From assembly GCA_965235115.1 (NCBI GenBank), contig OZ249452.1, positions 12,710,001-12,774,000 of the forward strand: a DNA stretch of 64,000 nucleotides, read 5' to 3'. The notes under the pieces were generated by a model, which worked only from the letters and a program-made list of their open reading frames with translations, was not told the DNA's origin and searched no databases. Shown piece after piece: positions 12,501 through 63,500 of this stretch (position 1 is the stretch's first letter; every line of letters starts with the position of its first letter). The stretch is from Laetmonice hystrix. Lineage: Eukaryota. Made by a program: the position numbers and the translations under genes.

Positions 12501-15500
12501 GTTACGGGCTTGGTGATTCATTGTGGCATCATTTCCTGAACCCTGTTCTAACACAGAAGCCCTGTTAACTAAGTCATATTTTGAGTCATATTTTGTGAAA
12601 CCAACACCTTCCTGCTTATTCAACTCAGTACACGCTATACCTCCTGCGCCTTTTGTATTCTCATCATCGGTTAGTGCTTTCTCTATATTTACAACAACCT
12701 TTCCACTTTCATGTGCACTATCTACCGGCGATACCTTTGTCCCAGTAACTTGGTCAAGAACAATTAGTGGTTGTTTTATCCCTGGTGATGTAAACTTCTT
12801 TGTGGTATCCTCACGAATATAACCCCATACCGTACCGCTTTGGTCTTGATTAAGGTTACTACTATCCTCTCCTGAAACTCCTTGAGTTACAGGCTGCAGT
12901 GCTTCAACATTCTGCCTTCCCTGATCATCTTTGATCTCATAACTTCCAACACCTTCTGTCCCTTCTTTGTGTAGAGGGTGAACCGATTTATGTTGTATTT
13001 CCTGTTCAAAGGTAGTTGTCGTGGTAACCAGAACAAGGTCATTGGTTGCGGGTATGGAAGGTGGTTCCACCCTCTGGTATTGTTCAACATCAGGACCTGG
13101 TACGTTGGTTTCCTTAACTAAACCGTCTTTTTCTTCTTCCTCATCATTTTCTCCCGACGTTACTATTTCTTGGCGATGGGAATTCATTGTGACATGACAG
13201 TCTGCTTCCTTAGACACCGGAGATAGACATGGTTTCTCTTCTAAAGTTTTGTTATGTGTCGGTTCCTCTCCTTGCTGCATGTCACCCTGACTCTCTGTTA
13301 TTTTAGTCGGTTCCACCGGTGGTGATCTCTCGGTACGACTGTTGTCCGATTCAGCTGTCGTTTCACCCTCTTCTTTGTATGCTTGTCTGGCCTTATCATC
13401 TGACTTGATGGGACTGGACTGCTCCGTGAGGATCCTTTGTGTTGATACTAAGACATACCCCTGTAAAACCTCTAAACAGCTCTCAGCGCCTTGTGGACCA
13501 CTGTCTCCTGGGACAAGACCCAAGTGTTGCTGGTTTGTGGTTGGTGAAGAAACCACAATGAAGTCATCCTCTTGGGTGGTCTCTTCACGCTGCACTGAAT
13601 GATCTGACTGATCTGTTTTCTGGATAGGTTGGGTTTCTGGGACTGCTGGAATCATTTCTCTGGTTACGAGTACGAAGTCATCGGTTTCAGTTCGCTCTGC
13701 AGGAGCGTGGATCGGCACTTCTGGGTGCCACTTGCAAGCAGGTTTGGCTGCTGTATCCTGAATGTCGCCTAAACTATAATATATAGGCCCAGGGTCTGCT
13801 GAATAGCTTTCACACTCCAGTCTTGTATCATCTTGGACGTCAAGCTGTACGTCTTCAGGAGTTACTGTCCCGCGGATTTTATCTGCGTGTAACTCATCCT
13901 GGATGTCTCTAGTGACTACAGATTCTTCAACCAAATTATATGGGCCTGTAGATTGCATACTGCCGCCTAAAACATGTAATGTGACTTGTTCCTCATTTGA
14001 TTCTTCAACCGAACTTTCCTCTCCACCAGGAGCTACAGATTCTACAACCAGCTGGCTTGCGTCTGTAGATGACACGCCTTCATCTGAAACTTGTAATGTG
14101 ACTCGTACCTCATTTGATTCTTCAACCGAAGTTTCCTCTTCACCAGGAGCTACAGATTCTTCAACCAGTTGACCTGCGTCTGTAGATGGCACGCCTTCAT
14201 CTGAAACCTGTAATGTGACTCGTTGCTCATTTGATTCTCCAACCGAAGTTTCCTCTCCACCAGGAGCTACTGATTCTTCAACCAGTTGATCTGCGTCTGT
14301 AGATGGCACGCTTTCACCTGAAACCTGTAATGTATCTTGTTCTTTGCCTGATTCCCTCACAGAGGGTTCCTCGCCATCAGGCTGCCTTACCCCATCTTTA
14401 GAGGCGACATGGGCTGAAATACGTTCTTTGACATGGGGATCAATGGCCTCAATGGCACTGTCACCCTTATCCACATCAAGATTGAAATCCGGGGTGCTCA
14501 GAACGGCTTCCTCTGCTGAAAGTGTTGGGGATGTTTCCTCCCAGCTTACTATGGGACTGCTTTCTTGCAAGTATGATGCATTCTGCTCAACCAGGTTATC
14601 CCCATCTACAGTATGTAAAGGTTCTGCCTTAGTTTGACTTGCTCCCTTTTGGATGTTCACTTCTGTAGCTTCCTCCAAAGGAGAAGCTATGTGAGCAGCG
14701 CTGGCTCTGGGCCATACTAGTCTTGTGCTTTCGGAAAACCCTTCTGAACTCAGCTTTTCGATTTTATCAGAGTTGTTGGAATACAGGCTTTCAGCTGGCG
14801 ATATATTTGCTTCAATGGCGTTAGTTGACTGAAGGTCATCTATTTGAGTTTCACTGCGAGTAACTGCAAAATAATATTCTTCATTGCTGACTGTCGGCAT
14901 TATGGCATGGTCCTCTTCATGGAAAGAATCATCCCACGGAGGGGATACTCGATGAAAGGTGCTTGGAATTCCTTGCTGAACTGAAATATGTACATCAGAA
15001 TATGTCTCTTTCTGTGGTGCTCCTTCAACTGGAACAATCGGAACAACGGGAACTGAGTTTCCTGGTTCTTTTTCAATCTCAACTTCCTTGGTTACTCTTA
15101 GATCCTCAATGCCCCTTTCGGGATCGACGGTTTGATCATTTATGAGCCTGTCAACATTGCCCTTGGCCTTGACCTTGACCCGTTTTCCCTCTACTATCTT
15201 CCAGTACCACTCCTCACTGGGGCTCTCTGCTTCCACAATCTCCCAGCATTCCTGCTCAGTAAAACCTCGTTCTGGGAATATGGCAACACGTTGTTCAGGG
15301 GACGCCTTGAAGATACAAACTGACCGAGGAACATTCAAATTCGAACTAACCTGTTTCAATGTAAGGTTCTCAAGGGTTTCCAGAGCATATTGCTGCGCGG
15401 GGGGCTTACCCATTGATAATTCCCCAATTTGAATTACGTTAATGAATTCATTTGACACCGTCCGAACGGATTCTCCTGTAAACATCTTCTTCTTACTTTC

Positions 15501-18500
15501 TTTACCTGAAAATAACCGCGCCCCTTCAACTCTGTCGCTCAATTTTTGACCCGATACAATCTCGTCAACCTTGTTCTCTGCTTCGATATGCGTTTCTATC
15601 ATGTCTGTATTGTCCGATTGAAGAATACCAAAAGTTTGGGACTGAACCGATTTGGCTGTTACCATTGATGAGGAACGTTTACCCAGATTTCGGTAGTGGG
15701 GACAGAGTTCAATAGATACGTGGTCATTTTCCTGCTTTACGTTATACAGCTCAAGATATTCAACGTAGCCTACCATCTCATCGCGATTTTCACAATAACA
15801 ATTTTCAAGAGGTTCGACCTGGAATTCACTCTCTCCCGAATCAATTATCCAAGAAGCGCGACTAACCTGAGGTTCCTGAACATGCTCTACTTCTACCTGA
15901 TCTGAAAAAGTTGTCTTTGAACGATTAATAACCTTGCCTGACAACAGATTCTGAATGTCATTAGCACCAATGTTAATAGGTTCTTTATCACTGTTGTGTA
16001 GGGACTGTGCTTCAGTCTGGAAGTGAGTGGTCACGTGACCCCTTGGTGAACTGGTGATGGGAGGTTCTTGGTGATTGTCCTTCTCCATGGAACTCCAATG
16101 GTCGACACGTTGAATTTGTAGATTGCCCGACATTTTATACATTTGTTTTCTTCCTGGTTCACGATGCCCATGCTTGGTACGCGTGGCTTCGCGGGACACT
16201 GAATCGTCTTTGATAAATTCTGCCTCGGATTCTAGGTTATCCATGAGTTTGTTGGAGAGGTAATGCATCGCCCGTTCTCCTTGACCATCATCTGACCGAT
16301 CAGGATGCTTTATATGCACGTTTAACTTGTCACTGATTTCTGAAATGGTCACTGAAGCCACACTCCTTTCTTGAGGTTCATTTGCATTTTTCTCCTGGGT
16401 CTCATCACACGAGACCAGGAAGGATTCAGAGAATTCTACACCATGACCCTGGATTTGTCGTCCGTGGCCATGAGGGGATTCCACTTGGTCACAACTGAAG
16501 GAACCATCATGGGTATCCGACTCAGATTTACTGCTGAGGTTCAGAGGTCCCTGGTTGCTTTCAAAGATTTCAGCATCTGATGACAGGTCAGCAAGGTTAT
16601 CTACAGCCCTTGGTTTCTTCACCTGACAAGGGGACCTTCCTCTTTCTGTGTCCTCATCACTTGCGGTTTCCTCAACCTTTTCAAGTGCACTGCTCTTTGA
16701 GGGACGCTGACTTTGCCCTTCACGCTCCTCATCAGTGACATCACTGTACTCACTGACCTCTTCAATGGTATACTGCCGATTCAGGACGACCTTGAGCATT
16801 TTCAGCTGAAGGTCAGTGCGGGGCGTTTCCTCATACGTTAGCAGTTGTGTGAGGTGGTCTGTCAGGTTGGCTGACCCCGGACTGGGTGTATCACTGGTTT
16901 CTAACTCCCAGGACAATGTACCTTCCTCCCAGGACAATGAACCTTCCCCAGAGGATGTAGATCCTTCAGAAGTAACTGGGCTTTCAGCGTCGTCCTGTGA
17001 CTGCGCCGTCCTTCCTTGTGTTTCGGTCTCTTCAACTGTGACGCTCTCACGTGACGTCTCCATGGAAACGTCACCACCAGGACGCGTGGCATCGACAGGC
17101 TTAATAGAGAAGTCACGTCTGTTTACGTACTCCACAGCTGGCCTATATAAGATTGGCTCCGGCGTTTCAGTTTCATTGGATGAGTATGACTGGTGAACAC
17201 GGTGAGAGGCAGGCAGGTTTCTGTCAGAAATACTTAGGGTTTTACCGTCCGCTTTGGGGACAATATTACTTAGAACATGACTTCTGAAAACTATTTCAGA
17301 ATCTGACGTTAATGTCTCTGCGAATTCCGGAGAGTCTAGCTCCTTTCCAGGGGATTCCTCTTCCACTGTGTTGAGGAAAGAAATGAAAAAATGGAAAACT
17401 CAGTATTTTGACACGATTACTGTTCGTGCAACCCAAACTCCCAGGTGAGAGCTATGCTCGGTGTTATAATAGAAATCAAATCGCAAGGACAAAAAGACCT
17501 CCACCTAACTAACTACTAACAGGAAATGATGGAAGAATAATAAACAGGATTCGTAAAGTCGATAGAAACTAAGGGTAAAGGTAGTGGTAACGCAGTGCTG
17601 GAAAACCGGAAACGGGGTCTTCAAGCAGGCTTTGTGACTTGTTTTGTCAGTTCTTTATTGAATTTTTGGTTTTATATTTGTGTGGTAGATACCTACCCAC
17701 CAATTTATTTTGAACGCTTTCAAATTATGATATTTAGATGATGTGTGAAAAAAATTATTAATGTTTTTATATCATTGGAGTCATTTCTTGTAACAGATAA
17801 ACGGGTACACATAATAATACCGTTTGGTTTTGTATTTCAACATATTCTAAAAACATTCTTTTAGAAATGATTTATTATTATATATTATGTAAAGCTAGGT
17901 CCAAATTGCACAGTCCCTTTGCAACCCAGTTCAGTTGTCGCTGGAATTTCGACGGTTATATTGCAGTTGTAAGGAGAAGCCTGAACTTATTTCCTGACAA
18001 TTAGAAGCGACGACCCAGCACCTTCCAAGTGTTAAAAAAGCTATGGTAAGCTCGCTGTTAGTGTAAACCATTATGTTGTTACATCCCAATCACCACTGTT
18101 TACAGTTATACTACGCTCCTAACCGCATCCCATACTCGTCCGCCCAGTTAATATAAGCCAACATCTTAAGACAAATGCATACTTTAGCATTACACGGATT
18201 TTGAAGTATAAGTCTTGTTTCATTAACATAATGGGTTCTTAATATTTTTTAATATGTTTTATCTACCATGATATTTTTGGTGTCCATAGAAGGCCACAAT
18301 TGTACTTATTTAAAGCAAGATTATCGTTAATTATTTGACTAATCCTGGAACTATTCAGATAAAATAAATACCAATATGCCTTTGATGGGATTCCTCACCT
18401 TCGACCTTGAGATAGGCCCCGGCCTCCTTGGCCCCTGCTCTGACAACATAATACCCCTCATCGATACCCGTGACGTCATAGACCCTCAAACACCTGGTGG

Positions 18501-48500: not shown

Positions 48501-51500
48501 GGGTGTGTCGTCATGAACTCTGACCCATTTGACCTGATCATGACCCAATTACATTAATTTCACATGCTGACGTTCTAGGACGGGTTACCTGGCAACCACA
48601 TGCACTTAGAGATCACTCATTGGTGCAACAAACACTCGACATTCAGCAGAAGTAGATAACACATGCTGTTAAAAATTGAATTCATTCATCCCTCTCTGAG
48701 ATTATTAGGGCTGGCGATCTCTAACATATAAATCCAGAAATTCCAAGAAAAATTACCAACATATTTACAAACCGACCAATCATGCCGTACTATTTTCATG
48801 ATTAATTATTTGATTATGAACCGTACTTTATCCCTATAGCGCACATGCTGGTGATCCTGGCTTTTTGATAACATCTTACATCCGCTGACCTTGAGTTTAT
48901 TCTCTGATGCAAGTCCTGACATGTAGCAGTTTGTATGGCTAAGAGGTATGGTGTAAAACTACCCATTGGTTATAAAATCATATTGAGGGTAGACCCTGTA
49001 CATGCTTGACAGACAGCTACAAGGTTTCACGATGCAAGGGGAGTCATTCAAGTTGATCTTCAGGTAACCTTGGGGCTAAATATACATCCTTACTGTATTG
49101 CTGACAAAGCAGGGTTGCTATGGGAACAGGTAGGATGTGATCCAGCCCTAAATAGGTTGCCATGACTACCATGCTGAGGAGGACACACAGCAAGTGTGAA
49201 ACAAATTCCCACAAACCTTGTGGAATCAGATTTGCTGAGGTTATGGCCTCTCCTGCCACATTCCGTGCACGACATGTATATGTCATCTCTGTGTCATCGA
49301 TCGTGACGCGAGTGATCGTCATGGTGGTTCGTTCCTCCACACGGGTCATCCGGTACTTTTCAGACTCCGGTATATCCATACCAGACACAAGCCATGTTGT
49401 CTCGGGTTCAGGCTTTCCGGTCGCCTTACACACCAAGGTCACGTCATCGTTCAAGGTCACTGGAGTGTCCTTGAGAGGTTGTGTAAATCTGGGTAGTTCA
49501 AACTCGATGTAGACACCACAGGTTGAAGAGATAGTGCCCGAGTCAGTGGTGACCGTGATGGTGTATTCACCTTCGTCATCCAGATCAGAGTCCGGAATCA
49601 CCAAGGTGAAGGTCAAGTCATCCGTCTGCGATTGGCTGTAACCAAGCAACGCACTCTACAAACGCTTGTCAAACACGCAGACAAAGGGGACGGCAATGAA
49701 GAACCGATACTTGAAATGTTATATCACTGTAGATATCGCAAAATATTGTTATACAGTGTTCAACGACAACTTCAAGAAGACATCTGAAAATTATACAACT
49801 TAAAAGTAAGTACTTATAGGTTTGCACTCTAGTGGTGGCCACATACATGTATCTGTCTCCGACGACCTCTTCCGAGTCCTTGAGCCAGCTGACCGTAACC
49901 TCCTCTTGGGTGGATACCTGAGAGGTGAGGGTGATGGTTTCTCCCACGGTCACGTGAACCGTCTCCAGGGCACGCAGGAAGGTCAACCCCTCCGGGCCGA
50001 TCTCTGTCACCTCCAGCTGAACACAAACACACAACAAAACAAATCATGAAGGACAAACACAACCACACAACAAAACAAATCATGGAGGACAAACGCAAAC
50101 ACACAACACAGCGAGATATTCCCCCATGGTAAAATTCCCATGAAACTGGGGGTTAGGGGGAGGGCTATGGACAGAAATAAGTATTTCGATTCGAGGTTTG
50201 ACATTAAGATGCCAATTTAGAATGGAAAGGAATGCTCAGGAACTTGAGCTTTATCATAGATGAGAAACTTCCTGACAAGGCATTTTTTTCAAGATTCAAA
50301 CCAAGTGCTGTGTGAACACAAAATAATATAACATATCTCACTCCCACTATTTTTAACTGCCTTGAAATCTGTGCCGTTGCCATGACAGTTTCCATAGCAA
50401 CCTTACCTCCTTGGTCCTCATTTCCTTGACGACCTGCCTGGCCTGCATCCCACGGAAGGCTGCCTGAATCTTAACGGCGGCATCTTCCCGTGTATCATCG
50501 TCTGTGATCTCAGTCACCAACAGGCTCTCGTCCGCGAAGGTTTCTATTCCAACAAAAAGTCATACTCGAGTCATGTCAAGGAAAACACTATGTGCTCTCA
50601 GAAATCGATCACAATCTAGTTACGTTATGTCACTATGAAATATACTTCACAGGAATAAACATGAAGAGTTGCCGTCGTTCTTTTTGTTCAACTACCTGTT
50701 ATCAATTACATTATCATGCTCAACAAGTGAAAATGCAAGAATTTAAGGCAAATATAGTTTAACTCGGACAACGCCAAACTCATACATATCACTATCAGAA
50801 CACGAATAGACATGCTTTCAGAAAGTAATAGTGTTTGCACTCAAACTGAAGTGATTCATAGTATGCAACAGAGTCAATAACTTTGGTAAAAAAAGGCAAA
50901 CATGCATAGCACACTCAATGTTCACAATCATGATGCTATTATGTCACTTCTAATCATTTCATCAAATATTTGGCAACATGACATGCAATTTTCGTTTGCA
51001 AACTATCCTTGTAAAATTGTAAGAATCCATGTGTTCTTACCCTGCATCTTACAGCTTAACCAAATACGAATCTATTAGAACAGGCATACAATATTTGGTC
51101 CAAAAATGTGTTATATATAAAAAAAATTTGCTTTTTTTCAAAATATGTGACGGATTTGACTGACATAATTTCAAGAAATATTATGCAAAAAAGTGACACA
51201 CCCTGATTCAGCATTTGAACTTTGACCCTATACTTTTCTTAACCCTTGGTCCTGTAGGTACTTTATGTTTATGTTTCGATGCATTCGTGTATAACTGAAG
51301 AGAACAACATGCAATTAGTGACACACACTTACCATCCACAATAAGGATAGCGTTTCTCTCCTGGATTCCGCCAGCATTGCTGGCCTCTACAGTGTACACC
51401 CCGGCATCCTCCGGGAACGCTTCCGGGAGATACAGAGAGTGCATCCCATCATCTCCTTCCTCGATACGGTAAATCTCAGGGTCATGCACGGGTTCACCCT

Positions 51501-54500
51501 CAAAATACCACACAACTTTAGGTGGGGGCGTGCCAGCGACACGACACACGAAACGGGCAGGCTCACCTTCCCGAACATGTACGTCCTGTGGGGCCTCCAA
51601 GAAGATGGCTGATCCCTGAAACAGTTCACAACGATTCTGAAGTCTCCTCTCACTGGCCAACAAAGATCCTTTACTCATAAGGGGTTCACACACTCGCTAA
51701 AGGGCACAGGCTTATATAGACAAGAGGGATTACAGTTGCCATACTGAAGTAAGAAAAGGTCCAGGAGTTACAGCAGGTTTTAAAAGGCTACTTGGTCTGT
51801 ACGACTACGGACAAGGATTTGCCAATCAAAACTAAGAAATGCACAAAGCAAAATAATAGTAAATGTATCAGGTTAAAAAAGAGTGTATAACTCTTCCTTC
51901 AAATAATGACCACACAAAGTAACATGTTAGAATCTGATTTCGTAATTTGTGCCAGGTTACAACATGCAGACAAAACAAACCTCTTCCACTCGGGATATTC
52001 GACGCAGGTCTTGTGGTCCTGAACGCCTTGCCCTAGCACTCGGCTCATGCTTAGCCTCACTTTCATTTTCACTATCACCTGCGTCTCTGTCAGCCTCGCT
52101 CTGGTCTGCAGCCTCACTTTCAGATTTAGCCACGTTTTCGGCATCAATGTCTCCTTTAGTTTCACCATTACTGTGACGTTCCAAACCAGAGTCTTCAACT
52201 GCGGCTTTGTCCAGTTGAGACTCCTCAACTAAACTCTGCTTGAATAAATCCGGGTCGTTTTCAATCTCGACTGAAGATTTTGTTTTTATTTCAAAGAATC
52301 TTTGTGAAACAGATAAATCTTGGGACGCCATCGTGTGATCAGGTGGAGAATTAACCTGTTGTAAATCTGCCCCGTGATCGGAGTCACTTTCTGAAAACGC
52401 CCAAACTTTTGTTTTTACTTTAGCATCTCCATCACCAGATGTAGGACTTTCAGAGTATGTCCGTAGTTGAGCAAGTTTGACCTGCAGAGGTTCTGACTCT
52501 ACAGGAATCAACACAGCATGCAATGGCTCAGGTTCAGGCGGGTAGTTCTCATCGTGGCCGCCAGGCGGAGCCTCTGCGTGACCATTTGGTGTCGGAGCAG
52601 ACAATTCACTAAAACTAGCGGCATGCAGCGTCTCATGCTCCGGGCTTACCTCTACCGTCTCTGTAGTCATTTGTCTATAATGGGAAAATGCAAAGGTTTC
52701 GTCAAACAAATAATATACAGCTACTTTAGACATATTATAAGAAATCTTTTAGCGTACCAGTACTTCCTTTACAATAAGAAAAGTGTTTCTACGAAATTTC
52801 TTCTTATCATTTTTAGAGCTACTCAATTCATGTCAGTAGACTATTTGAACCCATGACATTCCGGGTCAATTATTATGTATGGTTACAATCAAGTTCAGTG
52901 TTAGAAGCATCTTCTACTGTGCGTAAGTTTAGTATTAGATGAACACGAAGCAGTAACAAGTGGTCACCCCCACCCCTGAGTACTCAAAGGTTGATATGAT
53001 AATCCAAACTCTTTAAAATGGCAAAGAGCTGAATACTTTATATATCAGATTCATATATTATGGAGATATAAAACATCCAGAAATTGTTCTTTGGTTTTGG
53101 TTTTCAATTTTTTTTCATTCCTGTTCTTTTCCAAGGAGCTTACTTTACTTCAGATGCATCTCGCTTCTTGAGTATGCTTCGGAAGTCCTTTTGTACTGGT
53201 CCAGGATGTTGGACAGGTCCAGTGTTACTCCTGCCGGAATTAGTAAAATAAGTCACAGCAAAAACACGACATGCTCCACACAACCATAACCCCAACACGG
53301 GTGAAAAGTACAAAAACATATCAAAATCAATACAAACACCCAAAGGGTTATGAGTACTTTATTATTATTTCTACATCACTACCAAAGCCAGATGAAACAA
53401 AGTTTCTTAGGAGCGATTAGAAAACGAAAGCATAAGTATTATGATCAGTTTAAAAGCAAACCAAAGGCAGAAGTATTATGATCAGTTAGCTAAAAGTAAG
53501 TTCACTGATTTTATACATCTATGTACACGTGAAATCCTGGGAACAGTATAAATACTTGGCATGTCGTCCTCTGACTCCTTTTTTTTCTCTCTCCTACGTA
53601 CCCCTTATCAGATTACGAATACGGTTTTTGATTAATCTTAAGGCGTTACTCGAATTTAATAGCCGGCAGCACCTAAAGTTAATCTCCCGTTTCTCCTGCC
53701 TAGAAAACAGCAGTACTTACTTGTCGGCTGATTTTAGTACGTTTCTGAAGTCAACCTGTTCAGTTCTATCAGGTCTCGGTGCGGCCTTTCTCCTGCCATG
53801 AAAACAGGGCTTAACTTTCCATTTCTCATTCTTAAAGAGTTAACTAACCCCGCAATTAACAGTGATGTATCTGTAGGCAAAGTTCTAACCTTCTTTTCAT
53901 CACCACCAAATCTGTTTTGTAAAATCGGGCAGCTATCAAGTCCTAACCAGTTCTTAAAGATGACCAGTTCATAAGGATCTATTTTGCTTGAGGTTCTACA
54001 TTAAAGTGTTGTGTGTAGTTTACATAATAATATTTGGTATGGATCAGTACAGTTAATACTATAAACTACACCCTGAGAACAACACTCAAACAACAAGTAA
54101 TGTGCCATGCTTAAAACTAGATATCAAAGTGCGAACAGCGGCGTGGTCACGTGGCATGCATAAACAGATTCCCGGGCCACAATCGGAGACGTTTCCGAGA
54201 AGATTGTACATCTTCAGGGAAAACTCTTAAGTTATAAGAGAAGCTCAAAATGAAAGTAACTCACGGAACAGTCTGCATATTATACATGCCGTACAAACAA
54301 ACTTACATTTCTGTTGTCGACGTCAACGTCTCTCTCAGGTCCTGTTTGGTTTCAGTGACACCTGGTGACGAGGATTAGAACCAGTATATAAGTACAAGCA
54401 AGAATGCCTCTATGAGTTTAATGCCCATAATACCTCAAGATTTACAACTTTTTCTCCTAAACCTTTTTAGCCCAGTTATGCAAATCTAATACTGAGCTAG

Positions 54501-57500
54501 CTTAATAAAATTGAGGAAAATATCCCCAAAATTTGGAAACGATTAAAATCAACTCTACAATTGCCAATAATTATAAGAAATATTTAATACAGTCGAAAAT
54601 TCTAAGATTCACCACAAACGACCAAAATGCTTCTTTCAGACAAACCCTTTGATAAAGCTGAAGTTTTAGGGTTTCATTGTATGAATCAAAACAGGTAGCA
54701 GGATAACCAAATGATTTTCCATAGAAAAAAATCACAGAGAAAATTTGTCAATCTGTTATAGAGACATCCTTTTCCTTAAATTCGAAAGTTCGAAACTGCC
54801 CATGACTGAAATCTCAAAGGTGCAAAATGTATCAACAGAAGTTCCAACAAATAACTCTGACACTTAGAAAAACATGTGTCAGCAGTTTTCTCCATAAAAG
54901 TTCAAATCAAAAATGGTAAAATCGTGAATGACTATGATCAGATAATGGCACTAAAAGACAAAATTATAAGGGCTCTCCTAACAATATATTCACGTGATCA
55001 GTATCAAAACTTACTCAAAAATAAAAAAAGCAACTGGAGGATTTTATATAAGCCTTGCAGAACCATGCTGAAGCTTATGACAACGATTCTGCATTCCTCA
55101 GTTTCTTTCCTTGAGTTCATGACATAAATATTTTAACAAGGGAACATTTCCGTAACATAGGTTTTAGTAGAACAAGTGACGGACCAGACTGGGATTGTGA
55201 GGACAGGACATGCTACTCGTACAAGCACTGGGGGTAGAGCATACGGGGCAGCGAAATAAGACAAAATTAAACCAACCCCCACCTACAAAAATAATAAATT
55301 ACCTTTTAGTCAGTGGCAAATTTATGCATAAATAACCAAAATGGTCAAAAGGATATTCTATCCCCTCCCCCCGTTTCCTTTCATTTGCATACTTCTTATG
55401 AACCACGAAACATGCTTTGCAACCAGTGAAAAGTTGAGTTCCACGAAAACATTTTGAAGATCTTTTTCTTCAAATTGCACCCACTACCTAATTCAAAACC
55501 ATTCTTGATATCAGCACCAAACTGCAACAATAGAAAGAGCACGAAGATTGTCCTTCTTTCGGAAAGACCAAACCTAAATATAGCCTAAAACCTACCATGT
55601 TGTCAAAACGCATGAGCCTAAATGAAAACGACGCCCAATTTCTATGACTTTTTTTCTACAATATCCTGAGATATATGAAGATTTTGAAACTGACACTCTT
55701 TATTATTGATGCAATAAGGTAGCCCGTTCCATTACGACGGAAAAACGCACAATCTAGAGGTACCATTCAAGGTATGTAGTAAAAGAAAAGACTCTTTTTT
55801 TCATTAGATGCAAGTGCTATATAAAACCCGTGCTGCCATCTAAAACAAAGGTGGCATCACCTTTGTAGTTTGCAAAAGATGTGCAATTGATAGAGTGCAA
55901 ATTGGAAGATGACACACCAAATCAATGAAGAGATATCTATACTTCCCTCCTGTTGACCCAGCTACTTGATAACCTTGGCTAAAATAACTTAAATTGGGTT
56001 GCGGGACAGCAAGACATCACTACAAGGAGAGGTCGAGAGGATAGACAAGATTCGGACAGCGCAGCGCAAAAACAAATAAATAAAACAAATAAACAATGTG
56101 AATAATTGTAATATATGCAAGCCTACAATGCCTGCTTCAATATGGAAAATACTGATCTCACGTTCAGTTGGTCCAGAAAGCTTTTATTATAAACACACGA
56201 ATTGTGTCACTGCATAACTTCCTTTAGAATTCAATCTTTTTTCCATCATTATGACCTTACAAAAGCTTCCTTGGTACTTCACTGACTCGAAAAGATCACA
56301 TTTTCCCACTGCAATTTTATTCCTCGCCAATGCGCATAATGAACATAAATAGTGAAATTAATACAAAAAGGTTGCGATGAGTTTTGTTCTCAGCAGTGTT
56401 CATACTGGTTGCTGAACACGTAAACCGCTCTGCTGTAAACAAGGAATCCCTCACTGACACAGCCACAAGTAAATGTGTTTCTGTTACAATCGTAGCTGTA
56501 TCAGTGGGAATGATCAGAAAACAATCAGTATATTAGGGAGAGTAGTGGTTAGTATAGTAGTCAGGAGAGGAGATGACAAGGTTGAGACTGATCAGATGAT
56601 TGGGAGTTTTAACGTCACGTGACTGATGACGTCAGAGGTTACGTCAGAGGATACGTCAGCCATGACTGATACATTGTAACAGTTTCACACCTCCTCAAAA
56701 CAACTGCTCCACTTCAAGTTCACCGGATACATTTATCTGGTATCACCAGACTGCCAATTACCAACGTGTTCGCATGAGAGTTGTTAAACATACATTTATT
56801 TATACATGTCAGAATCTATAGCAAAACAAAGAGTAACCGATTCTTCACTTATGTACCGTGATCATCACACATTGTAAATGTACAGTGTAACATACAATGA
56901 TGACAATGGTTGTATCATACTCACGGTTGACGATCAGGGACACTGACATGGTCAGTTCACCCAAGTCATTACGAGCAACGATTTTGTAGCTGCCGGCGTC
57001 CTGTGGCTCCACCTGGTGGACGGTTAGAACAACATGGTAGGTGGACTCGTCCTCCTGGACGTCGATCTGGTAGCGACCTTCTTGGTTCTCCAGCACAACG
57101 TCATTGTGACTCCAGACAATCTGTGGCAACGGAAAAACATCATTTTGGGGGCTGGGCAGGTTCAACTTAAAATCTTACAAATGGATCATACAGGGAACTT
57201 TTAACCACTGTAAATACAATTAACAAATGGATTTTGTCAAGTCATACCTCCGGTTTGGGACTGCCAAGGATCACTGTGTCAAAGACGACTGTGTCTCCTT
57301 CATTGGCAGTCTGTGCTTTCGGCTTCGACACCACTGATGGCGCTACACCCTCTTCCTTTGGTTCTTCAGGGGCTGCAAGGTAAAATCACAGCTCATATGA
57401 TATGCAATAAAGTGAACACATATAATAGAGATTGTAGTGCATCTCTCAACACCTACCGAGCAAATATATCTCTTATAATGACAACTTTTCACTAAATTAC

Positions 57501-60500
57501 CTCCTGTATATAAGACATATTTTAATAATTGATATTTTGCACAGGTATTAAAATATTCGTCATACATCTTACACAAAGGTATCTCCTGGCGTTTTTCAAT
57601 TTCAAATTTCAGAATTTCGCTATCAATTCATAATCTTAAATAGTAGGACTGCAGAAAACTACTCCTAAAATCTTAACAACGGTTTAATTACAGCATAAAT
57701 ATCTGTGGTTTGAATTGGATTATGAAATATTCTGGGTATAGGGTATGTGACTGGTTAAGTACTGGCATACACAGAGTAAGTCAAGTGTCTATAAATGTAC
57801 CACATCAAAATTAATAATTCTGGTCAATTAGTCAAATAAAAGCCAGTAAAACCATGCAAATGCAGAGCCAATTTGGGAGGTACCTTCAGACTACCAGACA
57901 AGTCATGGTTCACTCACCCTCCAGGACAATAAGTTCAGCTGAACACATTGCCGTTCCTGACAAGTTTTTCGCAACACACGTATACCTTCCTGTGTCCTCT
58001 GGGAAAACTTCTTTAATAATCAGTGAGCATTGGTTGTCGTCATCGTAAAACTGGAGAAAGTCTGGGGATGGCTCGAGCAAAATACTGTCCCGGAACCAGG
58101 CAACATTAGGTTTAGGGTTCCCAGAGATGGAGCATTCAAAACGGGCCAGGTCGCCATCATGCATGTACAGACTCCTCAAGGGTTGCAGGAATTGAGGACC
58201 TTCAGGATGTCCAACGACGTCTTCCTCTATGAAATGATGGCAATTCCAATGCATTTTTTAAATACAAAAGTTATGTTAGTTTCACACAACTCATGCACAT
58301 GCTAAGGTTTTGAGATCTCCCCCAGGAAACGTATATACTTTATAAAGTAACTCACAAATAGTATGTCACCCTGTGACATACGTGTTCTATAATGATCAGC
58401 TCAGAATTTTTGTCACATAAATATAAATGTTAAAATCATGACAATTCCCTACACCTCAAGAAAACGTCCCCTTACTTGTTTCTGCAGGGATGTCTTCAAT
58501 AGCTCGAGTAAGCTGCCTCTCCACCAGTCTGTTGTACTCTTCCTTCTCCTTTAGAAAACTTCCAGGCACCCATCCCTCTTTATTATTGAAAGCTTTCTTT
58601 ACAAGCCACCAATCATCCTGGGAGTCATCTAACACCTCCACTTTCTCTCCTTCATGGAGCGACATGACCTCGTCTGACTCGGGATCATAGGAACTTATCG
58701 CTATGAAACAAAGTCGATCATCCACATTGAAGTCGGAGCCAGCTGCGCTTAGATTGCTCCGGGAGTGTGAAGACCCTTTGTCCATGTCATGGAGTGAGTT
58801 AACAGAAGGTGCTGACACTGATATATTATCTGGTTCATCGACCTGAGGTTCTGCCACAGCGTGTGTGATAATGCTCTCCGTACGATCCAATGTCTTACGG
58901 CTCTCTGTCAGATCAGTGTTGGTGGAGACTTGGGTATGTTGTTCCAGGGATACGTCTCCGCGGTGACTGAGCTCCATCTTGATGGTTTTCACCTCTGTCA
59001 CTTTTGTCTGGAGTGTCACCTCCTCGATGACTTGTGCCTCTTCTGTTTTGTAAATCTTATCGCTCTCAAACTGGATTCCTGCAAGGTGTCCCGGAGAGGT
59101 GGACTCAGTGAAGACCATGTCGGGACGGAGTGTCACCTCAAACGTTGGGTCCATGTAGTTGCCCGGAATGGCGACGACCTGTTGCTCTGCCTGTATGCTG
59201 TACTCTTCCTCACTGTCGTCGGCAAACGACGTTGTCATCTCAGGCATTTCTCGTTCTTCTTCCCTAACAACCATCTGCTTCACCTGCTCAGCCTTGAACT
59301 GGTCACTTTTGATGGTGGGATGGGGAATAACTGTGACACTTGTTGTCTCGAAGACGAAAGGGTCTGATTTACTTATCTTAATCTCTTGGTATCTTTCCTT
59401 GATGAAGGACGGCCTTCCGTCAGCTCCCACCTCCTCATGGATCTCCCGGTAGTGCCTGGAGTTCTCCCTTCTTGGAATCAGCTGAGACATCATCGTGCTA
59501 TCTTCACGGATGTTTTCTGACTCTATGACCTGTACATTGCCTTCCTGTATGGTTTCTCGTGTAATGTTGGCACTACCATTTTGAATGACACTTGTTTCGG
59601 ACTCGGCGACGTCTGTTCCTGTCTGACTGTGGGCCAAATGAAGGCTCTTGTCTTCCTCCTCTTCCTCTGATTCCGTTGATTCGGAGTCTTCAGACTCACT
59701 TCTCCAAACAATGGGGACCTTTTTAACAACCTCTTCCCTCCCCTGTAACGTTTCTGTTGTTTTTCTTGACTCCTGTTTGACTGTCACCTCCATAGTATCT
59801 GCCGTGGAGGAGATGATTTCAATTTCACCCTCTTCCACACCTTCGTCCTCTTCTTCTTCTTCTGGAAGTTTAAGCTGGGGAACTTGGATCTTTCTTTCAA
59901 TCATTGGAACATCCTCTTCCAATACGTCTTCTTTTTCTTCCTCTTCGGAATCTGTTGCCTCATCACTATCAGATTCTAATTCCATCTCGTTTGCTCTCTG
60001 AGTAACTACTGTGGTTTCTGTAGCCTTCATTATGTCTGAGCCTTCCACGAGAACAGAGGTAGTGCTATGCTGTGTAATTTCTGAAGACATTGACTCGAAC
60101 TCCTCACTCTCCTCGTTTGGAAGATTAAGTTTCGGAATCTCTATCTTCCTTTCAACCCTTTCCAATTCTTCCTCCAGGATTTCATCTTCAGATTCTGAGT
60201 CCTCGTCACTCCCCAGTTCATCCTCAATCCCCACCGAACTTTGGATAGATACCTCCATCCCTTTACCTTTCTCTACGTTTTCTCCTGGAAGGCATGCAGG
60301 AAAGTCACACATAACCAAAAATAAAACCATGCTTAATTAATCAAGAGTAATAATAAGGAAAGCATTCAAAGATACATTAAAACCAAAGGTGTTTTAATTC
60401 TTCAAACATCTCCTTGGGAATCAGATTTTACTAGCCTAGGAGTAGTTTCATTTAAAGTTTTTTCGACGTTTTTCTAAAGACGTCTAAAATAAATATTTCT

Positions 60501-63500
60501 ACTCTGAAAATAACGTTGAATGGCCTGTAATCAAGCCACGGGCAGCCCCCAAAGTGAAAAGATTCTTCCAATTGTGCCAATTAAGGGGAGGTAGTCATGT
60601 TTTGCCATTTACCGGTGGCGCTACTGCCGATCGACAAAACACCTTTTCGCTGACAATCCCCCCCCCCCGAATTTCTCTAACCAAAACCTAATTACCCTTA
60701 GGCTATTGTACCCCAACAGAAATGTTTCAAAATGATAATACAATTAATTCAAGTAAGATATTAAAGATCTGGACATGCTCTTCCAAAGGTTGTTCTAAAT
60801 GAGCCATACAGGAAACATATTCATTCAGTAGCACACAGTAAGATCGTCCAAACCGAAGTCTCCCACAGACAGGAGAAGAACATGCTATTAGAGATAGCCT
60901 GAGAGCTATATCCTGGAGCTAACCTACCTTGTATGACCATTGTTTGAACCTGTTCAGTAACGTCTGTCGTCATCTCCGCCGAGTCGACAACATCTTGGGT
61001 GATTCTGACAAGGTAAATGGGGCAGTTTCTGTAGATCCATGGAGTGTTCTTGTTGAAGTACAGTTTCAACCAGACGAGTGCAATCAAGGCCAAAAGGCCA
61101 CACACAAAAAAAATAACCGTGCCAAAAGCTGTTAGCCAAAGTGCATTTTGTGAATTCTATTCCACTTTTAACTGTTTGACAATAAATTGAGAACCTTGGC
61201 AATGCTTCGTTAAATTTATTATTATAGAATACTCGACGGTATCGGAGAACTTCGAGTTGCTAAACTACATCCTATGTGTTCCCTAAGTCTACCAGGTTGG
61301 TAAATACAATCAGTAGATAAATTTAAAAGCAACTTACTGCATCTGAATTTGGGCCTCCTCCACTGAAACAACACAATATGATATAATGAAACGTTTGCCT
61401 ATCTATCCAAGTTTCAAAAGTCTCCCTAAATCTTCAAATTTGAGATGAAATATTGGCCTCTGTTCAGTACTGTATTACGGTTATCTGGCTCGTGTCATAA
61501 GACATCGTTTTTTGTCTATCTTTTTCTTCTGTTTCCGAAAACATAAATAATCTCATTTTTTTAATATATACGTAGGCAGCTGAGTTTCGCAGCTGTTACA
61601 GAATAAAGCAAGCACAAAATGAGTAAGAGAACCAGCAGTATTTACAGAGGCATGTGTAATATTCATTTCCAGGGGAAGCTTGATAAACCAGGACAATGAG
61701 GTCGTATTAAACTTTTTGTTTTAGCTCTCCAGTTTTTTTACGCACATTAAAACGTGATATAAGTGCTTGTAGTGTATTAAAAAGGAATATTTATATGTGA
61801 TAGGGGAGAGCAATGTATTAGACACGTAGTGCAGAGCAGCGCACACATATATTCTAACAATCTAAGTCAGATTCACACTTGATTGCTGAAATGAAGCATG
61901 CTTTGCATAAAAGAGAGAAAACACGTTCGAAACAATAATAAATAATGCACACAGTGTATGTAATAGAACCTAAAGACATGACATGCCACAAATTCATCAC
62001 AACTTGAACACCACAAAAGGTGACAGAAACTCATCAACATGAATAACAAGGCACAAGACATACGAAACGAAAGAGCAAATCACACACAGCAAAATTGTCC
62101 GTCTTTGCAACTGATCGGACTTGGTGGCGAATATCCTGTCCCACACAGGTTATTTACAAATTTCAGTTTCAAATGAGAGATTCAGTTACATCAATTTTGT
62201 ACACTGGCTGAACGTTTTCCCATACACGGTATACTTATTAGATGCGTGGGGAAAGAGAAATATTTCTGGAATTGGAATAGGGAACAGATATTTTGCATGC
62301 TGCCAAGTATGGTTATGCTGAGTAGAATGAAAGCTGCACAAATAAGGAAGGTTAACAGAGATATCATGGATGTTGTAGCAATGGAGAAAATATAAATACG
62401 AAATAAAGATCAACATGAAACATCGCATAAAGGGCCAAAAATCAAGTCCTTGAAAGTCTGATGAGAAAGATAATATTTTATCTGTCACGTAGCTTTCAAG
62501 ACGAAACGGCTTCATTTTTAGCCCGGAATGTAAAAACAAGATCAGAATCTTTCAGACATGAGAATTGACTGGCGAAAAATATCAGCTGTTGACTTATCAA
62601 CGGGTTTCACGGTTAGAAAAAAGCGGTAATCCGCCAATCCGTAGGCAACTCTCATGTCTGATACTGTCTCTATTTATTGCAAATGGCAGAAACTGTAAGA
62701 CAAAAACCAACTGAAAGCGTTGTCAGATGTTTGGTTGCCTTCATTTCTGTGTGAATTTAATACTTTAATAATTTAATCAAATATATTGCAATGACCCGAT
62801 ACTTCGGAAAAGTCTGTTCTTTCTCAACCAAACTATGTACAGCGCTCCAGCGTCATGTGCGAACACGAGCGCAATGAAATGTATTATTGTAAGAAGCAAC
62901 TGAAATGTAAATAGCGCGAAGGATTATGCACAAGTATATGTGAGGGGGGCTGCAAATGGCTGCGTCGCCAACACTTGAGAAGAATTCAAAATGAACATAA
63001 CGTTCATAACATGAACTGGTAAACAATGCTCATGACACATTCCAGCAAATACCAATCAGAATAACAATAACTGACTTTCCAGGCCAATCAGACAATAGCA
63101 TAGATTGTTCAGATTGTTCTGGATTCCTTTTACCAATCACAAAAACAGTCTCTGAAATAAACCATGCTCTCTCAATCTCAGAAACTCTATATTATAAAGA
63201 AATGAATTGATCTAATTCATGCTAAAATAAACAAGTCAGCTGTACGCTGATAAACATCTACAATCTCGTAGTCGCTCTACCAGAAAAACCAACATCAGAT
63301 CCAGTTGTAAATCTAACAAATTTATAGAACGAACAATAAACCATGCTTCCTCCATGCCCATAATGTGTACCTTGCTGGACAGGTGTTTCAGGTGCCTTCT
63401 GAACGATTTCTTCACTTGTTATGGCCTCGTGTGTCATCTTAGTGACCTCCTCTGGTGAAACACCTTCGGTTGTGTAGGTGACAGTTTCTTCTGTTGTTTC

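What the first reader, a model, noticed from the sequence alone, without database searches (positions are those of the whole stretch)
53144..54361. DFRxxL actin-binding-type motifs, each on its own micro-exon
Seen in sequence: three micro-exons encode KQDLRETL (55 nt), QVDFRNVLK (72 nt) and QKDFRSILKKRD (87 nt). The two DFRxxL exons are symmetric (phase 2-2), so they can be skipped independently. Established: DFRxxL repeats are the thin-filament-binding motifs of smooth-muscle MLCK (e.g. QVDFRSVL) and also occur in molluscan twitchin. DFRSILKKRD also resembles the MyBP-C M-domain DFSSLLKKRD. Inference: the actin-binding valency of a titin-like filament may be tuned by splicing.
Basis: partly seen in the sequence, partly recalled or inferred. 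Interest (0 to 1): 0.8.

Follow-up and report, generated by a model that had tools for sequence, protein, structure and literature searches.

The report
MLCK-type actin-binding motifs on optional micro-exons
A giant titin-like muscle gene of an invertebrate carries DFRxxL motifs, the kind that anchor myosin light-chain kinase to actin filaments, on tiny exons that are conserved in distant relatives and left out of the one transcript seen, so the number of motifs is probably set by splicing.

Summary
On the minus strand, three micro-exons with AG/GT borders sit between two Ig exons of a giant SH3/Ig/PEVK-type muscle gene:
- A, 54361-54307, 55 nt, DLRETL.
- B, 53792-53721, 72 nt, QVDFRNVLK.
- C, 53230-53144, 87 nt, QKDFRSILKKRD.

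All junction phases fit. B and C are symmetric (phase 2-2).

The only RNA-like run has one contig that joins Ig2b to A, then to a 25-nt exon, then to Ig3. Exon A is therefore real, and B and C are skipped in that contig. No read shows B or C included.

B and C are still real coding exons. Four relatives whose introns no longer align keep the module at the same place:
- L034 has 78- and 84-nt phase-2 exons.
- L032 and L001 each have one 87-nt phase-2 exon.
- L008 has six tandem D[FW]RxxL[KR]K motifs in one long exon.

D, R and L are invariant in all 12 units. A profile of these units hits exactly the three actin-binding motifs of rabbit smooth-muscle MLCK (26.4 bits; the best of 1000 shuffles scored 5.7).

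With A, B and C all included, the motifs lie 25 residues apart, against 28-29 in MLCK. Actin binding and tissue-specific inclusion remain untested.

I rate this a new variant of a known kind, with moderate to high interest.

The parts
58476..60330 (-). Large acidic exon that ends in an SH3 domain. The upstream border was not determined; 60330 is the ORF limit. The donor follows 58476.
   Evidence: Pfam SH3_1 at E 3e-11. X4 contig 22 ends at 58476 and continues into the start of the next exon. More than 190 exon-bounded homologues were found in other animals.
57918..58226 (-). Ig1 exon (I-set), 309 nt.
   Evidence: Splice sites read. The X4 loose end at 58476 equals the first bases of this exon. 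Orthologous I-set exons follow the SH3 exon in L001, L002, L005, L007, L008, L032 and L033.
57248..57372 (-). Ig2a exon, the first half of the second Ig domain, 125 nt.
   Evidence: X4 contig 19 covers it and joins 57248 to 57120. Upstream, the same contig joins to an exon that ends at 60929, skipping the SH3 and Ig1 exons.
56925..57120 (-). Ig2b exon, the second half of the second Ig domain, 196 nt, ending in phase 1.
   Evidence: The X4 contig 19 joint 56922/54358 (cut +3) joins 56925 to 54361. blastn matches L034 1262-1451 at 66% identity.
54307..54361 (-). Micro-exon A, 55 nt, phase 1 to 2. It carries a degenerate DXRXXL motif (DLRETL).
   Evidence: It is spliced on both sides in X4 contig 19, depth 45. 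Same-phase orthologues of 43-49 nt occur in L007 (DFRTQL), L032 (DFRDGL), L001 (EFTTQL) and L034 (no DxR).
53721..53792 (-). Micro-exon B, 72 nt, phase 2-2, motif QVDFRNVLK. It is an optional cassette.
   Evidence: Canonical ag|...|gtaagt borders. It is skipped in X4 contig 19, and X4 does not hold this stretch. The orthologue is L034 6238-6315, 78 nt, same phase, EQKDFRSILK. Shuffle null.
53144..53230 (-). Micro-exon C, 87 nt, phase 2-2, motif QKDFRSILKKRD. It is an optional cassette.
   Evidence: Canonical ag|...|gtaagc borders. It is skipped in X4 contig 19. Orthologues are L001 13920-14006 (87 nt), L032 19390-19476 (87 nt) and L034 7005-7088 (84 nt), all phase 2-2 with D[FY]RxxL[KR].
52650..52674 (-). 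25-nt micro-exon (QMTTETVE), phase 2 to 0. It is the short form produced by an internal GTAAGC donor.
   Evidence: X4 contig 19 joins 54307 to 52674. At 52649 it leaves the stretch for sequence equal to the start of the Ig3 exon at 51615. Orthologous 26-49-nt exons are in L008, L001, L034 and L032.
51981..52649 (-). Optional acidic extension, the long form of the previous exon (694 nt in total, same frame as the 25-nt form). It ends in QDLRRISRVEE before a GTTTGT donor.
   Evidence: It is an open frame that keeps phase with the Ig3 acceptor. It is not in the X4 contig. The equivalent extension in L008 carries six tandem D[FW]RxxL[KR]K motifs. The extensions in L001 and L008 end in a DFR-like motif before a GTTTG donor; the L034 extension does not.
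51320..51615 (-). Ig3 exon (I-set). It starts at 51615; the downstream border is approximate.
   Evidence: Pfam I-set at E 3e-20. The start equals the X4 loose end. It is 73% identical to P0151/L034.

Best explanation
The stretch is the linker between the second and third Ig domains downstream of the SH3 domain of a giant titin/connectin-like muscle protein. The linker is a conserved module of short linear motifs with the consensus Q-x-D-F-R-x-x-L-[KR]-K. This is the same motif type as the DFRxxL/DXRXXL repeats that tether smooth-muscle and non-muscle myosin light-chain kinase to F-actin, one motif per actin subunit.

In this genome the module is split over micro-exons:
- A carries a degenerate motif and is present in the transcript seen.
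- B and C each carry one perfect motif. They are frame-neutral cassettes and are skipped in that transcript.

Including B and C would give three motifs spaced exactly 25 residues apart.

Shown here:
- the exon structure;
- the splicing of A and the skipping of B and C;
- conservation of the cassettes and of the D, R and L positions in relatives whose introns have diverged beyond alignment;
- recognition of the rabbit MLCK motifs by a profile of these units.

Inferred:
- the motifs bind the thin filament;
- muscles that include B and/or C get a titin-like filament with more actin contacts, which would mean more drag, stiffness or anchoring in the I-band.
For: - Exon chain and phases.
- RNA: the X4 contig joins Ig2b, A, the 25-nt exon and Ig3, so A is real and B, C and the acidic extension are skipped. 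X4 does not hold the B-C stretch.
- Conservation: an 87-nt phase-2 DFR exon in L001 and in L032; 78- and 84-nt phase-2 exons in L034; six tandem motifs at 24-35-residue spacing in the homologous long exon of L008. Only the Ig exons of L034 still align to the window at DNA level.
- Alignment A1 of 12 units has D, R and L invariant and variable flanks.
- The A1 profile scores rabbit smMLCK N75 at 26.4 bits, with three hits on its three motifs; the best of 1000 shuffles scored 5.7 (sequence from PMC4586593).
- Chance is excluded by the shuffle null.
Against: - No read or contig shows B or C included in this species. Only one RNA-like run, of unknown tissue, exists.
- Actin binding was not and could not be tested here.
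- Homology with MLCK, as opposed to convergence on a six-residue motif, is not established. Searches with the L008 array found no relatives.
- The motif of exon A is not conserved. In the closest relative, the motif in C is DYR rather than DFR.
- Spacing is 25 residues here, not 28-29.
Confidence: 0.6

Rival explanations
1. B and C are real, conserved, optional coding exons, but the Q-x-DFRxxL-KK motif docks a partner other than actin. Candidates are myosin, calmodulin (an IQ exon lies just downstream), or a kinase or phosphatase. On this reading the likeness to the MLCK motif is convergent.
For: - Only six to nine residues are shared with MLCK, and no wider homology was found.
- The units always carry a basic pair after the L, which only the second MLCK motif approximates.
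- C resembles the cMyBP-C segment around Ser302. That segment is reported to act on myosin as well (PMC8921245), although the score is weak.
- L034 keeps an IQ-type exon next to the module.
Against: - The profile of the units picks out all three functional MLCK motifs and nothing else in N75.
- The regular 24-35-residue spacing suits a periodic partner such as F-actin, as in MLCK.
- The host is a thin-filament-adjacent I-band-type protein.
Confidence: 0.22
2. In this species B and C are no longer used. They would be relic exons that persist in the intron while only A and the 25-nt exon are spliced.
For: The single RNA-like data set has zero depth over both exons and a well-supported contig (depth 45) that skips them.
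Against: - Both keep open frames, the correct phase, a pyrimidine tract with AG, GTAAG donors and perfect motifs.
- The heterozygous variants listed across the intron (about 37 sites) include none inside B or C. This is only modest evidence, because 15 rows were not shown.
- Orthologues survive in species whose introns are unalignable.
- Assembled contigs drop minor isoforms, and the tissue is unknown.
Confidence: 0.1
3. The motifs are chance matches in intron sequence, and the splice-like borders are fortuitous.
For: Seven DFRxx[LIVM] matches on this strand in 264 kb is about what chance gives.
Against: - A motif-bearing symmetric candidate exon appeared 2 times in 2000 shuffles, and two are observed.
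- Same-phase orthologous exons, or a motif array, are present in all four relatives with enough sequence.
Confidence: 0.01

Closest known systems
DFRxxL / DXRXXL actin-binding repeats of vertebrate smooth-muscle and non-muscle myosin light-chain kinase (MYLK)
   Same: - The core is the same: D-[FV]-R-x-x-L, often preceded by Q-V or Q-K and followed by basic residues.
- The copies are tandem at a regular spacing: 28-29 residues in MLCK, 25 here and 24-35 in relatives.
- They lie in a disordered linker next to Ig domains of a titin/MLCK-superfamily protein.
- The number of motifs differs between isoforms: 3 in short MLCK, 5 in long MLCK.

Sources.
   Different: - The host is a giant SH3/Ig/PEVK protein, not MLCK.
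- Motif number would be set by cassette-exon skipping rather than by alternative promoters.
- Each motif has its own micro-exon here.
- The basic pair after L is nearly invariant.
- Actin binding is untested.
- MLCK-family kinase exons lie 119 kb and 270 kb downstream on the same strand. Whether they share a transcript with this exon chain is unknown.
DFRxxL motif reported in molluscan (Mytilus) twitchin (recalled from memory, not verified in the library searched)
   Same: It is an invertebrate giant muscle protein of the titin family carrying the MLCK-type motif in an inter-Ig linker. That motif has been implicated in a regulated link to the thin filament.
   Different: - Twitchin is an Fn3/Ig/kinase protein. 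The present module lies in an SH3/Ig/PEVK I-band-type region upstream of an Fn3-rich region.
- Here there are several motifs, on optional micro-exons.
- No paper mentioning this was found.
Cardiac MyBP-C M-domain segment around Ser302 (FSSLLKKRDS)
   Same: Exon C reads F-R-S-I-L-K-K-R-D-A against F-S-S-L-L-K-K-R-D-S (peptide printed in PMC8921245). Both lie in a disordered linker between Ig domains of a sarcomeric protein.
   Different: - The defining Arg of the motif is Ser in MyBP-C.
- The profile score is only 8.9 bits and is reached by 8 of 1000 shuffles.
- No tri-helix bundle was examined here.
- This is a lead, not a membership.
Nebulin simple repeats and kettin/Sallimus Ig-linker modules (thin-filament rulers and binders with one module per actin; from general knowledge)
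   Same: A repeated short module with a period that matches actin subunits, in a giant filamentous muscle protein. In nebulin, module number varies by exon skipping.
   Different: The motif (SDxxYK in nebulin) and the module length (about 35 residues in nebulin) are unrelated. Those modules are long constitutive arrays, whereas here there are one to three (or six) copies in a single linker.

Membership tests
MLCK-type DXRXXL/DFRxxL actin-binding repeats | Core consensus D-[F/V]-R-x-x-L | tested here: met
   B reads DFRNVL and C reads DFRSIL. A reads DLRETL, which fits DXRXXL. D, R and L are invariant in the 12 orthologous units. The definition comes from PMC2196421 and PMC2185581.
MLCK-type DXRXXL/DFRxxL actin-binding repeats | Two or more tandem copies at a regular spacing of about 28-29 residues | tested here: met
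   With A, B and C included, the D-to-D spacing is 25 and 25 residues. It is 24 in L032, 26 in L001 and 24-35 in the six-copy array of L008. This is slightly shorter than in MLCK.
MLCK-type DXRXXL/DFRxxL actin-binding repeats | Sequence likeness to bona fide MLCK motifs beyond the bare hexamer | tested here: met
   The profile of A1 scores rabbit smMLCK N75 at 26.4 bits, with domains at residues 1-7, 24-41 and 47-63, which are its three motifs. The 1000 shuffles had mean -1.4 and maximum 5.7.
MLCK-type DXRXXL/DFRxxL actin-binding repeats | Direct binding to F-actin, about one motif per actin subunit, lost on mutation of D, F and R | not testable with these tools
   This needs co-sedimentation or imaging.
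MLCK-type DXRXXL/DFRxxL actin-binding repeats | Host protein is an MLCK (kinase with a calmodulin-regulated segment and a telokin Ig) | tested here: inconclusive
   Within the window the host is an SH3/Ig/PEVK giant. MLCK-family kinase exons lie on the same strand 119 kb and 270 kb downstream, beyond an Fn3-rich region. Continuity of the transcript was not shown.
Alternatively spliced cassette micro-exons | Canonical splice sites, open frame and a length divisible by three in the phase of the flanking exons | tested here: met
   B is 72 nt and C is 87 nt, both phase 2-2, with a pyrimidine tract plus AG and a GTAAG donor.
Alternatively spliced cassette micro-exons | A transcript that skips them | tested here: met
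   X4 contig 19 joins 54307 directly to 52674.
Alternatively spliced cassette micro-exons | A transcript that includes them | tested here: inconclusive
   No RNA-like contig covers B or C. Only one such run exists, its tissue is unknown, and contigs drop minor isoforms.
Alternatively spliced cassette micro-exons | Conservation as exons in other species | tested here: met
   Orthologous phase-2 exons occur in L034 (78 and 84 nt), L032 (87 nt) and L001 (87 nt), in all cases between the Ig2 and Ig3 exons.
MyBP-C M-domain | Regulatory segment with the LLKKRDS-type site followed by a tri-helix bundle between two Ig domains | tested here: inconclusive
   Exon C matches 7 of 10 residues of the published peptide, but the profile score is weak (8.9 bits, 8 of 1000 shuffles). 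PDB searches returned nothing relevant. No tri-helix bundle was looked for.

The most novel reading that the evidence does not exclude
The Q-x-DFRxxL-KK unit is an ancient thin-filament-docking motif shared by descent among I-band titin-like proteins, MLCK and perhaps the MyBP-C M-domain. In invertebrate titin-like genes its copy number would be a regulated variable. It is set by micro-exon cassettes in some lineages and by an alternative 5' splice site that removes a whole six-motif array in others. Different muscles could then dial the actin drag or anchoring of their elastic filament.
Probability: 0.3. Interest if true: 0.75.

Novelty: new variant of a known kind. Interest (0 to 1): 0.6.

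Why it matters
How invertebrate titin-like filaments engage the thin filament, and how muscles tune passive stiffness and viscous drag, is only partly understood. This finding offers a defined, conserved, optional module of MLCK-type actin-binding motifs at a fixed position in the protein.

It gives concrete peptides and exon junctions to test. It suggests that the MLCK actin tether is older and more widespread in the titin superfamily than the kinase itself. It also provides a natural series for relating motif valency to filament binding: 0-1, 2 or 3 motifs by exon choice, and 6 in one relative.

Tried and rejected
- RNA support. Two run searches found only four runs, all from one sample. The one RNA-like run, X4, shows skipping only.
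- Homologues of the motif array. The search for homologous proteins with the L008 array found nothing among 383 candidates. The ESM Atlas gave no usable hit. PDB searches with exon C, with the L008 array and with profile A1 returned nothing relevant.
- Gene identity through the SH3 domain. The PDB gives only generic SH3 hits.
- Closest relative. P0001 is 74% identical in the SH3 exon, but no DNA was available and its cluster has one member. P0006 also had no DNA.
- Uninformative loci. L002-L006, L009 and L033 end too soon after the Ig exons. A DVRHTL match at L034 2318 has no splice sites and was rejected.
- Wider genome context. The gene upstream of the window and the region around the second kinase were therefore not scanned.
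- Twitchin. No paper on the reported twitchin DFRxxL motif was found in the library.
- The organism's phylum could not be determined with the tools given.
Full report
**Observation**

The gene lies on the minus strand. Reading the reverse complement of 53100-54420 shows three small open segments.
- A is 54361-54307, 55 nt, and contains KQDLRETL.
- B is 53792-53721, 72 nt, and contains EQVDFRNVLK.
- C is 53230-53144, 87 nt, and contains QKDFRSILKKRD.

Each is preceded by a pyrimidine-rich tract and AG, and each is followed by GTAAG.

**Gene context**

Going 5' to 3' on the minus strand, the window holds the following.
- A repeat-rich exon near 63983-63258.
- A large acidic exon that ends in an SH3 domain (to 58476; Pfam SH3_1 at E 3e-11).
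- An I-set Ig exon (58226-57918).
- A second Ig domain split in two exons (57372-57248 and 57120-56925).
- The three micro-exons.
- An exon that starts at 52674.
- A third Ig exon, starting at 51615.
- More Ig exons, and a 6.2-kb open exon.

The window is G000:C29:12710001-12774000. Further downstream on the same strand, about 90 kb is dense in Fn3 and Ig signatures (12.68-12.595 Mb). It ends at kinase exons at 12,591,1xx, whose best PDB match is the MLCK family, followed by twitchin and titin. A second MLCK-like kinase lies at 12,440,xxx.

The locus is therefore titin-like in layout. Whether all of it is one transcription unit was not established.

**Phase logic**

- Ig2b ends with one spare base.
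- A (55 nt) takes two bases to finish that codon and leaves two.
- B and C each take one base and leave two, so both are symmetric.
- The exon at 52674 takes one base.

A is not symmetric. It keeps frame only together with the 25-nt exon that follows.

**RNA evidence**

Two searches found only four public runs that hold this DNA, all from one sample. Three behave as genomic DNA. The fourth, X4, has spliced contigs and is evidently RNA.

One X4 contig (648 nt, depth 45) reads as follows:
- 57372-57248, joined to 57120-56925;
- joined to 54361-54307, which is exon A;
- joined to 52674-52650;
- it then leaves the stretch for letters that equal the start of the Ig3 exon at 51615.

This gives four results.
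- Exon A is a real, spliced exon.
- B and C are skipped in this transcript.
- The exon at 52674 is used in a 25-nt short form through an internal GTAAGC donor.
- The 669-nt acidic continuation (52649-51981) is also left out. It would keep frame if its GTTTGT donor were used.

X4 has zero depth over B and C and is not a holder of the B-C stretch. The upstream end of the same contig maps to an exon that ends at 60929. The dominant X4 isoform therefore also skips the SH3 and Ig1 exons, while weaker X4 contigs join SH3 to Ig1. Alternative splicing in this region is thus shown directly, but inclusion of B or C is not.

**Are B and C real exons?**

Chance was tested first. In the 1632-nt intron between A and the 25-nt exon, B and C are the only candidates with all of these features: a pyrimidine tract plus AG, a GT[AG]AG donor, a length divisible by three, and an open frame in the required phase. 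Dinucleotide shuffles give 0.21 such candidates on average, with P(>=2)=0.04. A candidate that also carries D-x-R-x-x-L arose 2 times in 2000 shuffles.

Conservation was tested next. A search with the SH3 region found over 190 exon-bounded homologues from other animals, and DNA around several of them could be fetched. The results are listed here.

| Locus | Likeness to window | What lies between the Ig2 and Ig3 exons |
|---|---|---|
| L034 | Ig3 73% identical; introns no longer align | 78-nt phase-2 exon (EQKDFRSILK), 84-nt phase-2 exon (DYRQHLKKRD), then a 34-nt exon with the same internal GTAAGC donor and an acidic extension |
| L032 | SH3 region 53% | 43-nt A-type exon (DFRDGL), 87-nt phase-2 exon (QVDFRANLK), 49-nt exon |
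| L001 | SH3 region 48% | 49-nt A-type exon (EFTTQL), 87-nt phase-2 exon (QKDFRGLLRK), 34-nt exon plus extension |
| L007 | SH3 region 46% | 49-nt A-type exon (DFRTQL); the contig then ends |
| L008 | SH3 region 45% | No micro-exons; the long form of the homologous exon carries six tandem D[FW]RxxL[KR]K motifs, 24-35 residues apart, behind a 26-nt short form with an internal donor |

All four relatives with enough sequence have the module. An alignment of the 12 cassette or array units has D, R and L invariant, F in 10 of 12, a basic residue after L in all 12 and at the second position in most, and otherwise free flanks. This is the signature of a short linear motif under selection in a disordered linker.

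**What the motif is**

The published definition is DFRXXL, or more broadly DXRXXL (PMC2196421; PMC2185581).
- There are three copies in short MLCK and five in long MLCK.
- The copies are 28-29 residues apart.
- They bind F-actin, at one short MLCK (three motifs) per three actin monomers.
- Mutating the motifs decreases myofilament association.

[quoted passage not shown] A profile built only from the 12 invertebrate units scores that sequence at 26.4 bits. Its three domain hits fall exactly on the three MLCK motifs, while 1000 shuffles of N75 reach at most 5.7 bits.

With A, B and C all included, the window's motifs start 25 and 25 residues apart. The corresponding spacing is 24 in L032 and 26 in L001. 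The units meet the sequence-level criteria of the family. Binding itself was not testable here.

**Mechanism proposed**

The linker between Ig2 and Ig3 is a thin-filament docking strip. The basal isoform carries only the degenerate A motif. Including B and/or C would add one full motif each without disturbing the frame.

In some lineages the same result comes from choosing the long form of the next exon instead of the short form (L008). Vertebrate MLCK achieves a similar change of valency, three motifs against five, by alternative promoters.

The exon logic and the motif identity are shown. Actin as the partner, and a physiological role in stiffness, drag or anchoring, are inferences by analogy.

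**Rivals**

- The partner may not be actin. The constant basic pair after L, the IQ exon just downstream (first-stage note s1-353807; Pfam IQ, weak, on the orthologous L034 exon) and the likeness of C to the cMyBP-C segment around Ser302 (peptide in PMC8921245) leave room for calmodulin or myosin. The MyBP-C score is weak, however: 8.9 bits, reached by 8 of 1000 shuffles.
- B and C may be unused relics in this species. Intact frames, splice sites and motifs argue against this. So does the lack of listed heterozygous variants inside them, among about 37 listed in the intron (15 rows were not shown, so this is only modest evidence).
- Pure chance is excluded.

**Novelty**

The motif type is known from MLCK. 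From memory, it has also been reported in Mytilus twitchin, but I could not verify this in the library.

I found no description of this motif as a conserved module in the SH3-bearing I-band region of an invertebrate titin-like protein. I also found none of motifs that each sit on their own optional micro-exon, or of a whole array removable through an alternative donor. I rate it a new variant of a known kind.

**Limits**

- The phylum of the organism and of the relatives is unknown.
- The gene's ends are unknown.
- Only one RNA-like data set, of unknown tissue, exists.
- The homology search for the motif array is limited by its length filters.
- The scan's earlier notes on this window are by first readers and unchecked. 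I used them only as pointers.

Noticed in passing
window 60929-61148 and 57372: The dominant X4 transcript contig (depth 45) joins an exon that ends at 60929 directly to 57372. It therefore skips the whole SH3 exon and the Ig1 exon. Weaker X4 contigs (depth 7-12) join SH3 to Ig1. The SH3-Ig1 block is thus itself optional.
   Followed up: partly
window 52674-51981; L001 about 15393-16219; L034 8141-9063; L008 14433-15010: A conserved alternative 5' splice site. A 25-34-nt short form ends at an internal GTAAG[CA] donor. A long, in-frame, acidic or motif-rich form ends at an unusual GTTTG donor in the window, L001 and L008. In those three the long form ends in a DFR-like motif (QDLRRIS, HQFRALH, KDFRSAL).
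   Followed up: partly
window 55277-55457: A 182-nt unspliced X4 contig (depth 13.8) lies inside the intron between Ig2b and exon A. It could be an unannotated exon, a retained fragment or a repeat expressed elsewhere.
   Followed up: no
window 51981-52030: The long acidic form ends with ARRSGPQDLRRISRVEE. It has two basophilic-kinase-type sites (RRS, RRIS) next to a degenerate motif. This recalls the RRIS site of the cMyBP-C M-domain (from memory) and suggests phosphorylation control.
   Followed up: no
G000:C29:12,595,000-12,680,000, 12,591,1xx (L010) and 12,440,xxx (L011): Downstream on the same strand there are at least 60 Fn3 signatures with Ig domains, followed by an MLCK-family kinase. 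A second MLCK-like kinase lies 150 kb further on. This is either a titin-like A-band part of the same gene or adjacent twitchin/MLCK-type genes.
   Followed up: partly
P0001 residues 20-27 (closest relative's SH3 exon; no DNA available): The orthologous SH3 exon of the closest relative begins with VVDFRRSLE. This is a further DFRxxL-type motif that is absent at that position in the window.
   Followed up: no
window 52675-54306: Haplotype contigs of the same individual differ at about 2% of intron positions, with several small indels. The organism is therefore highly heterozygous.
   Followed up: no
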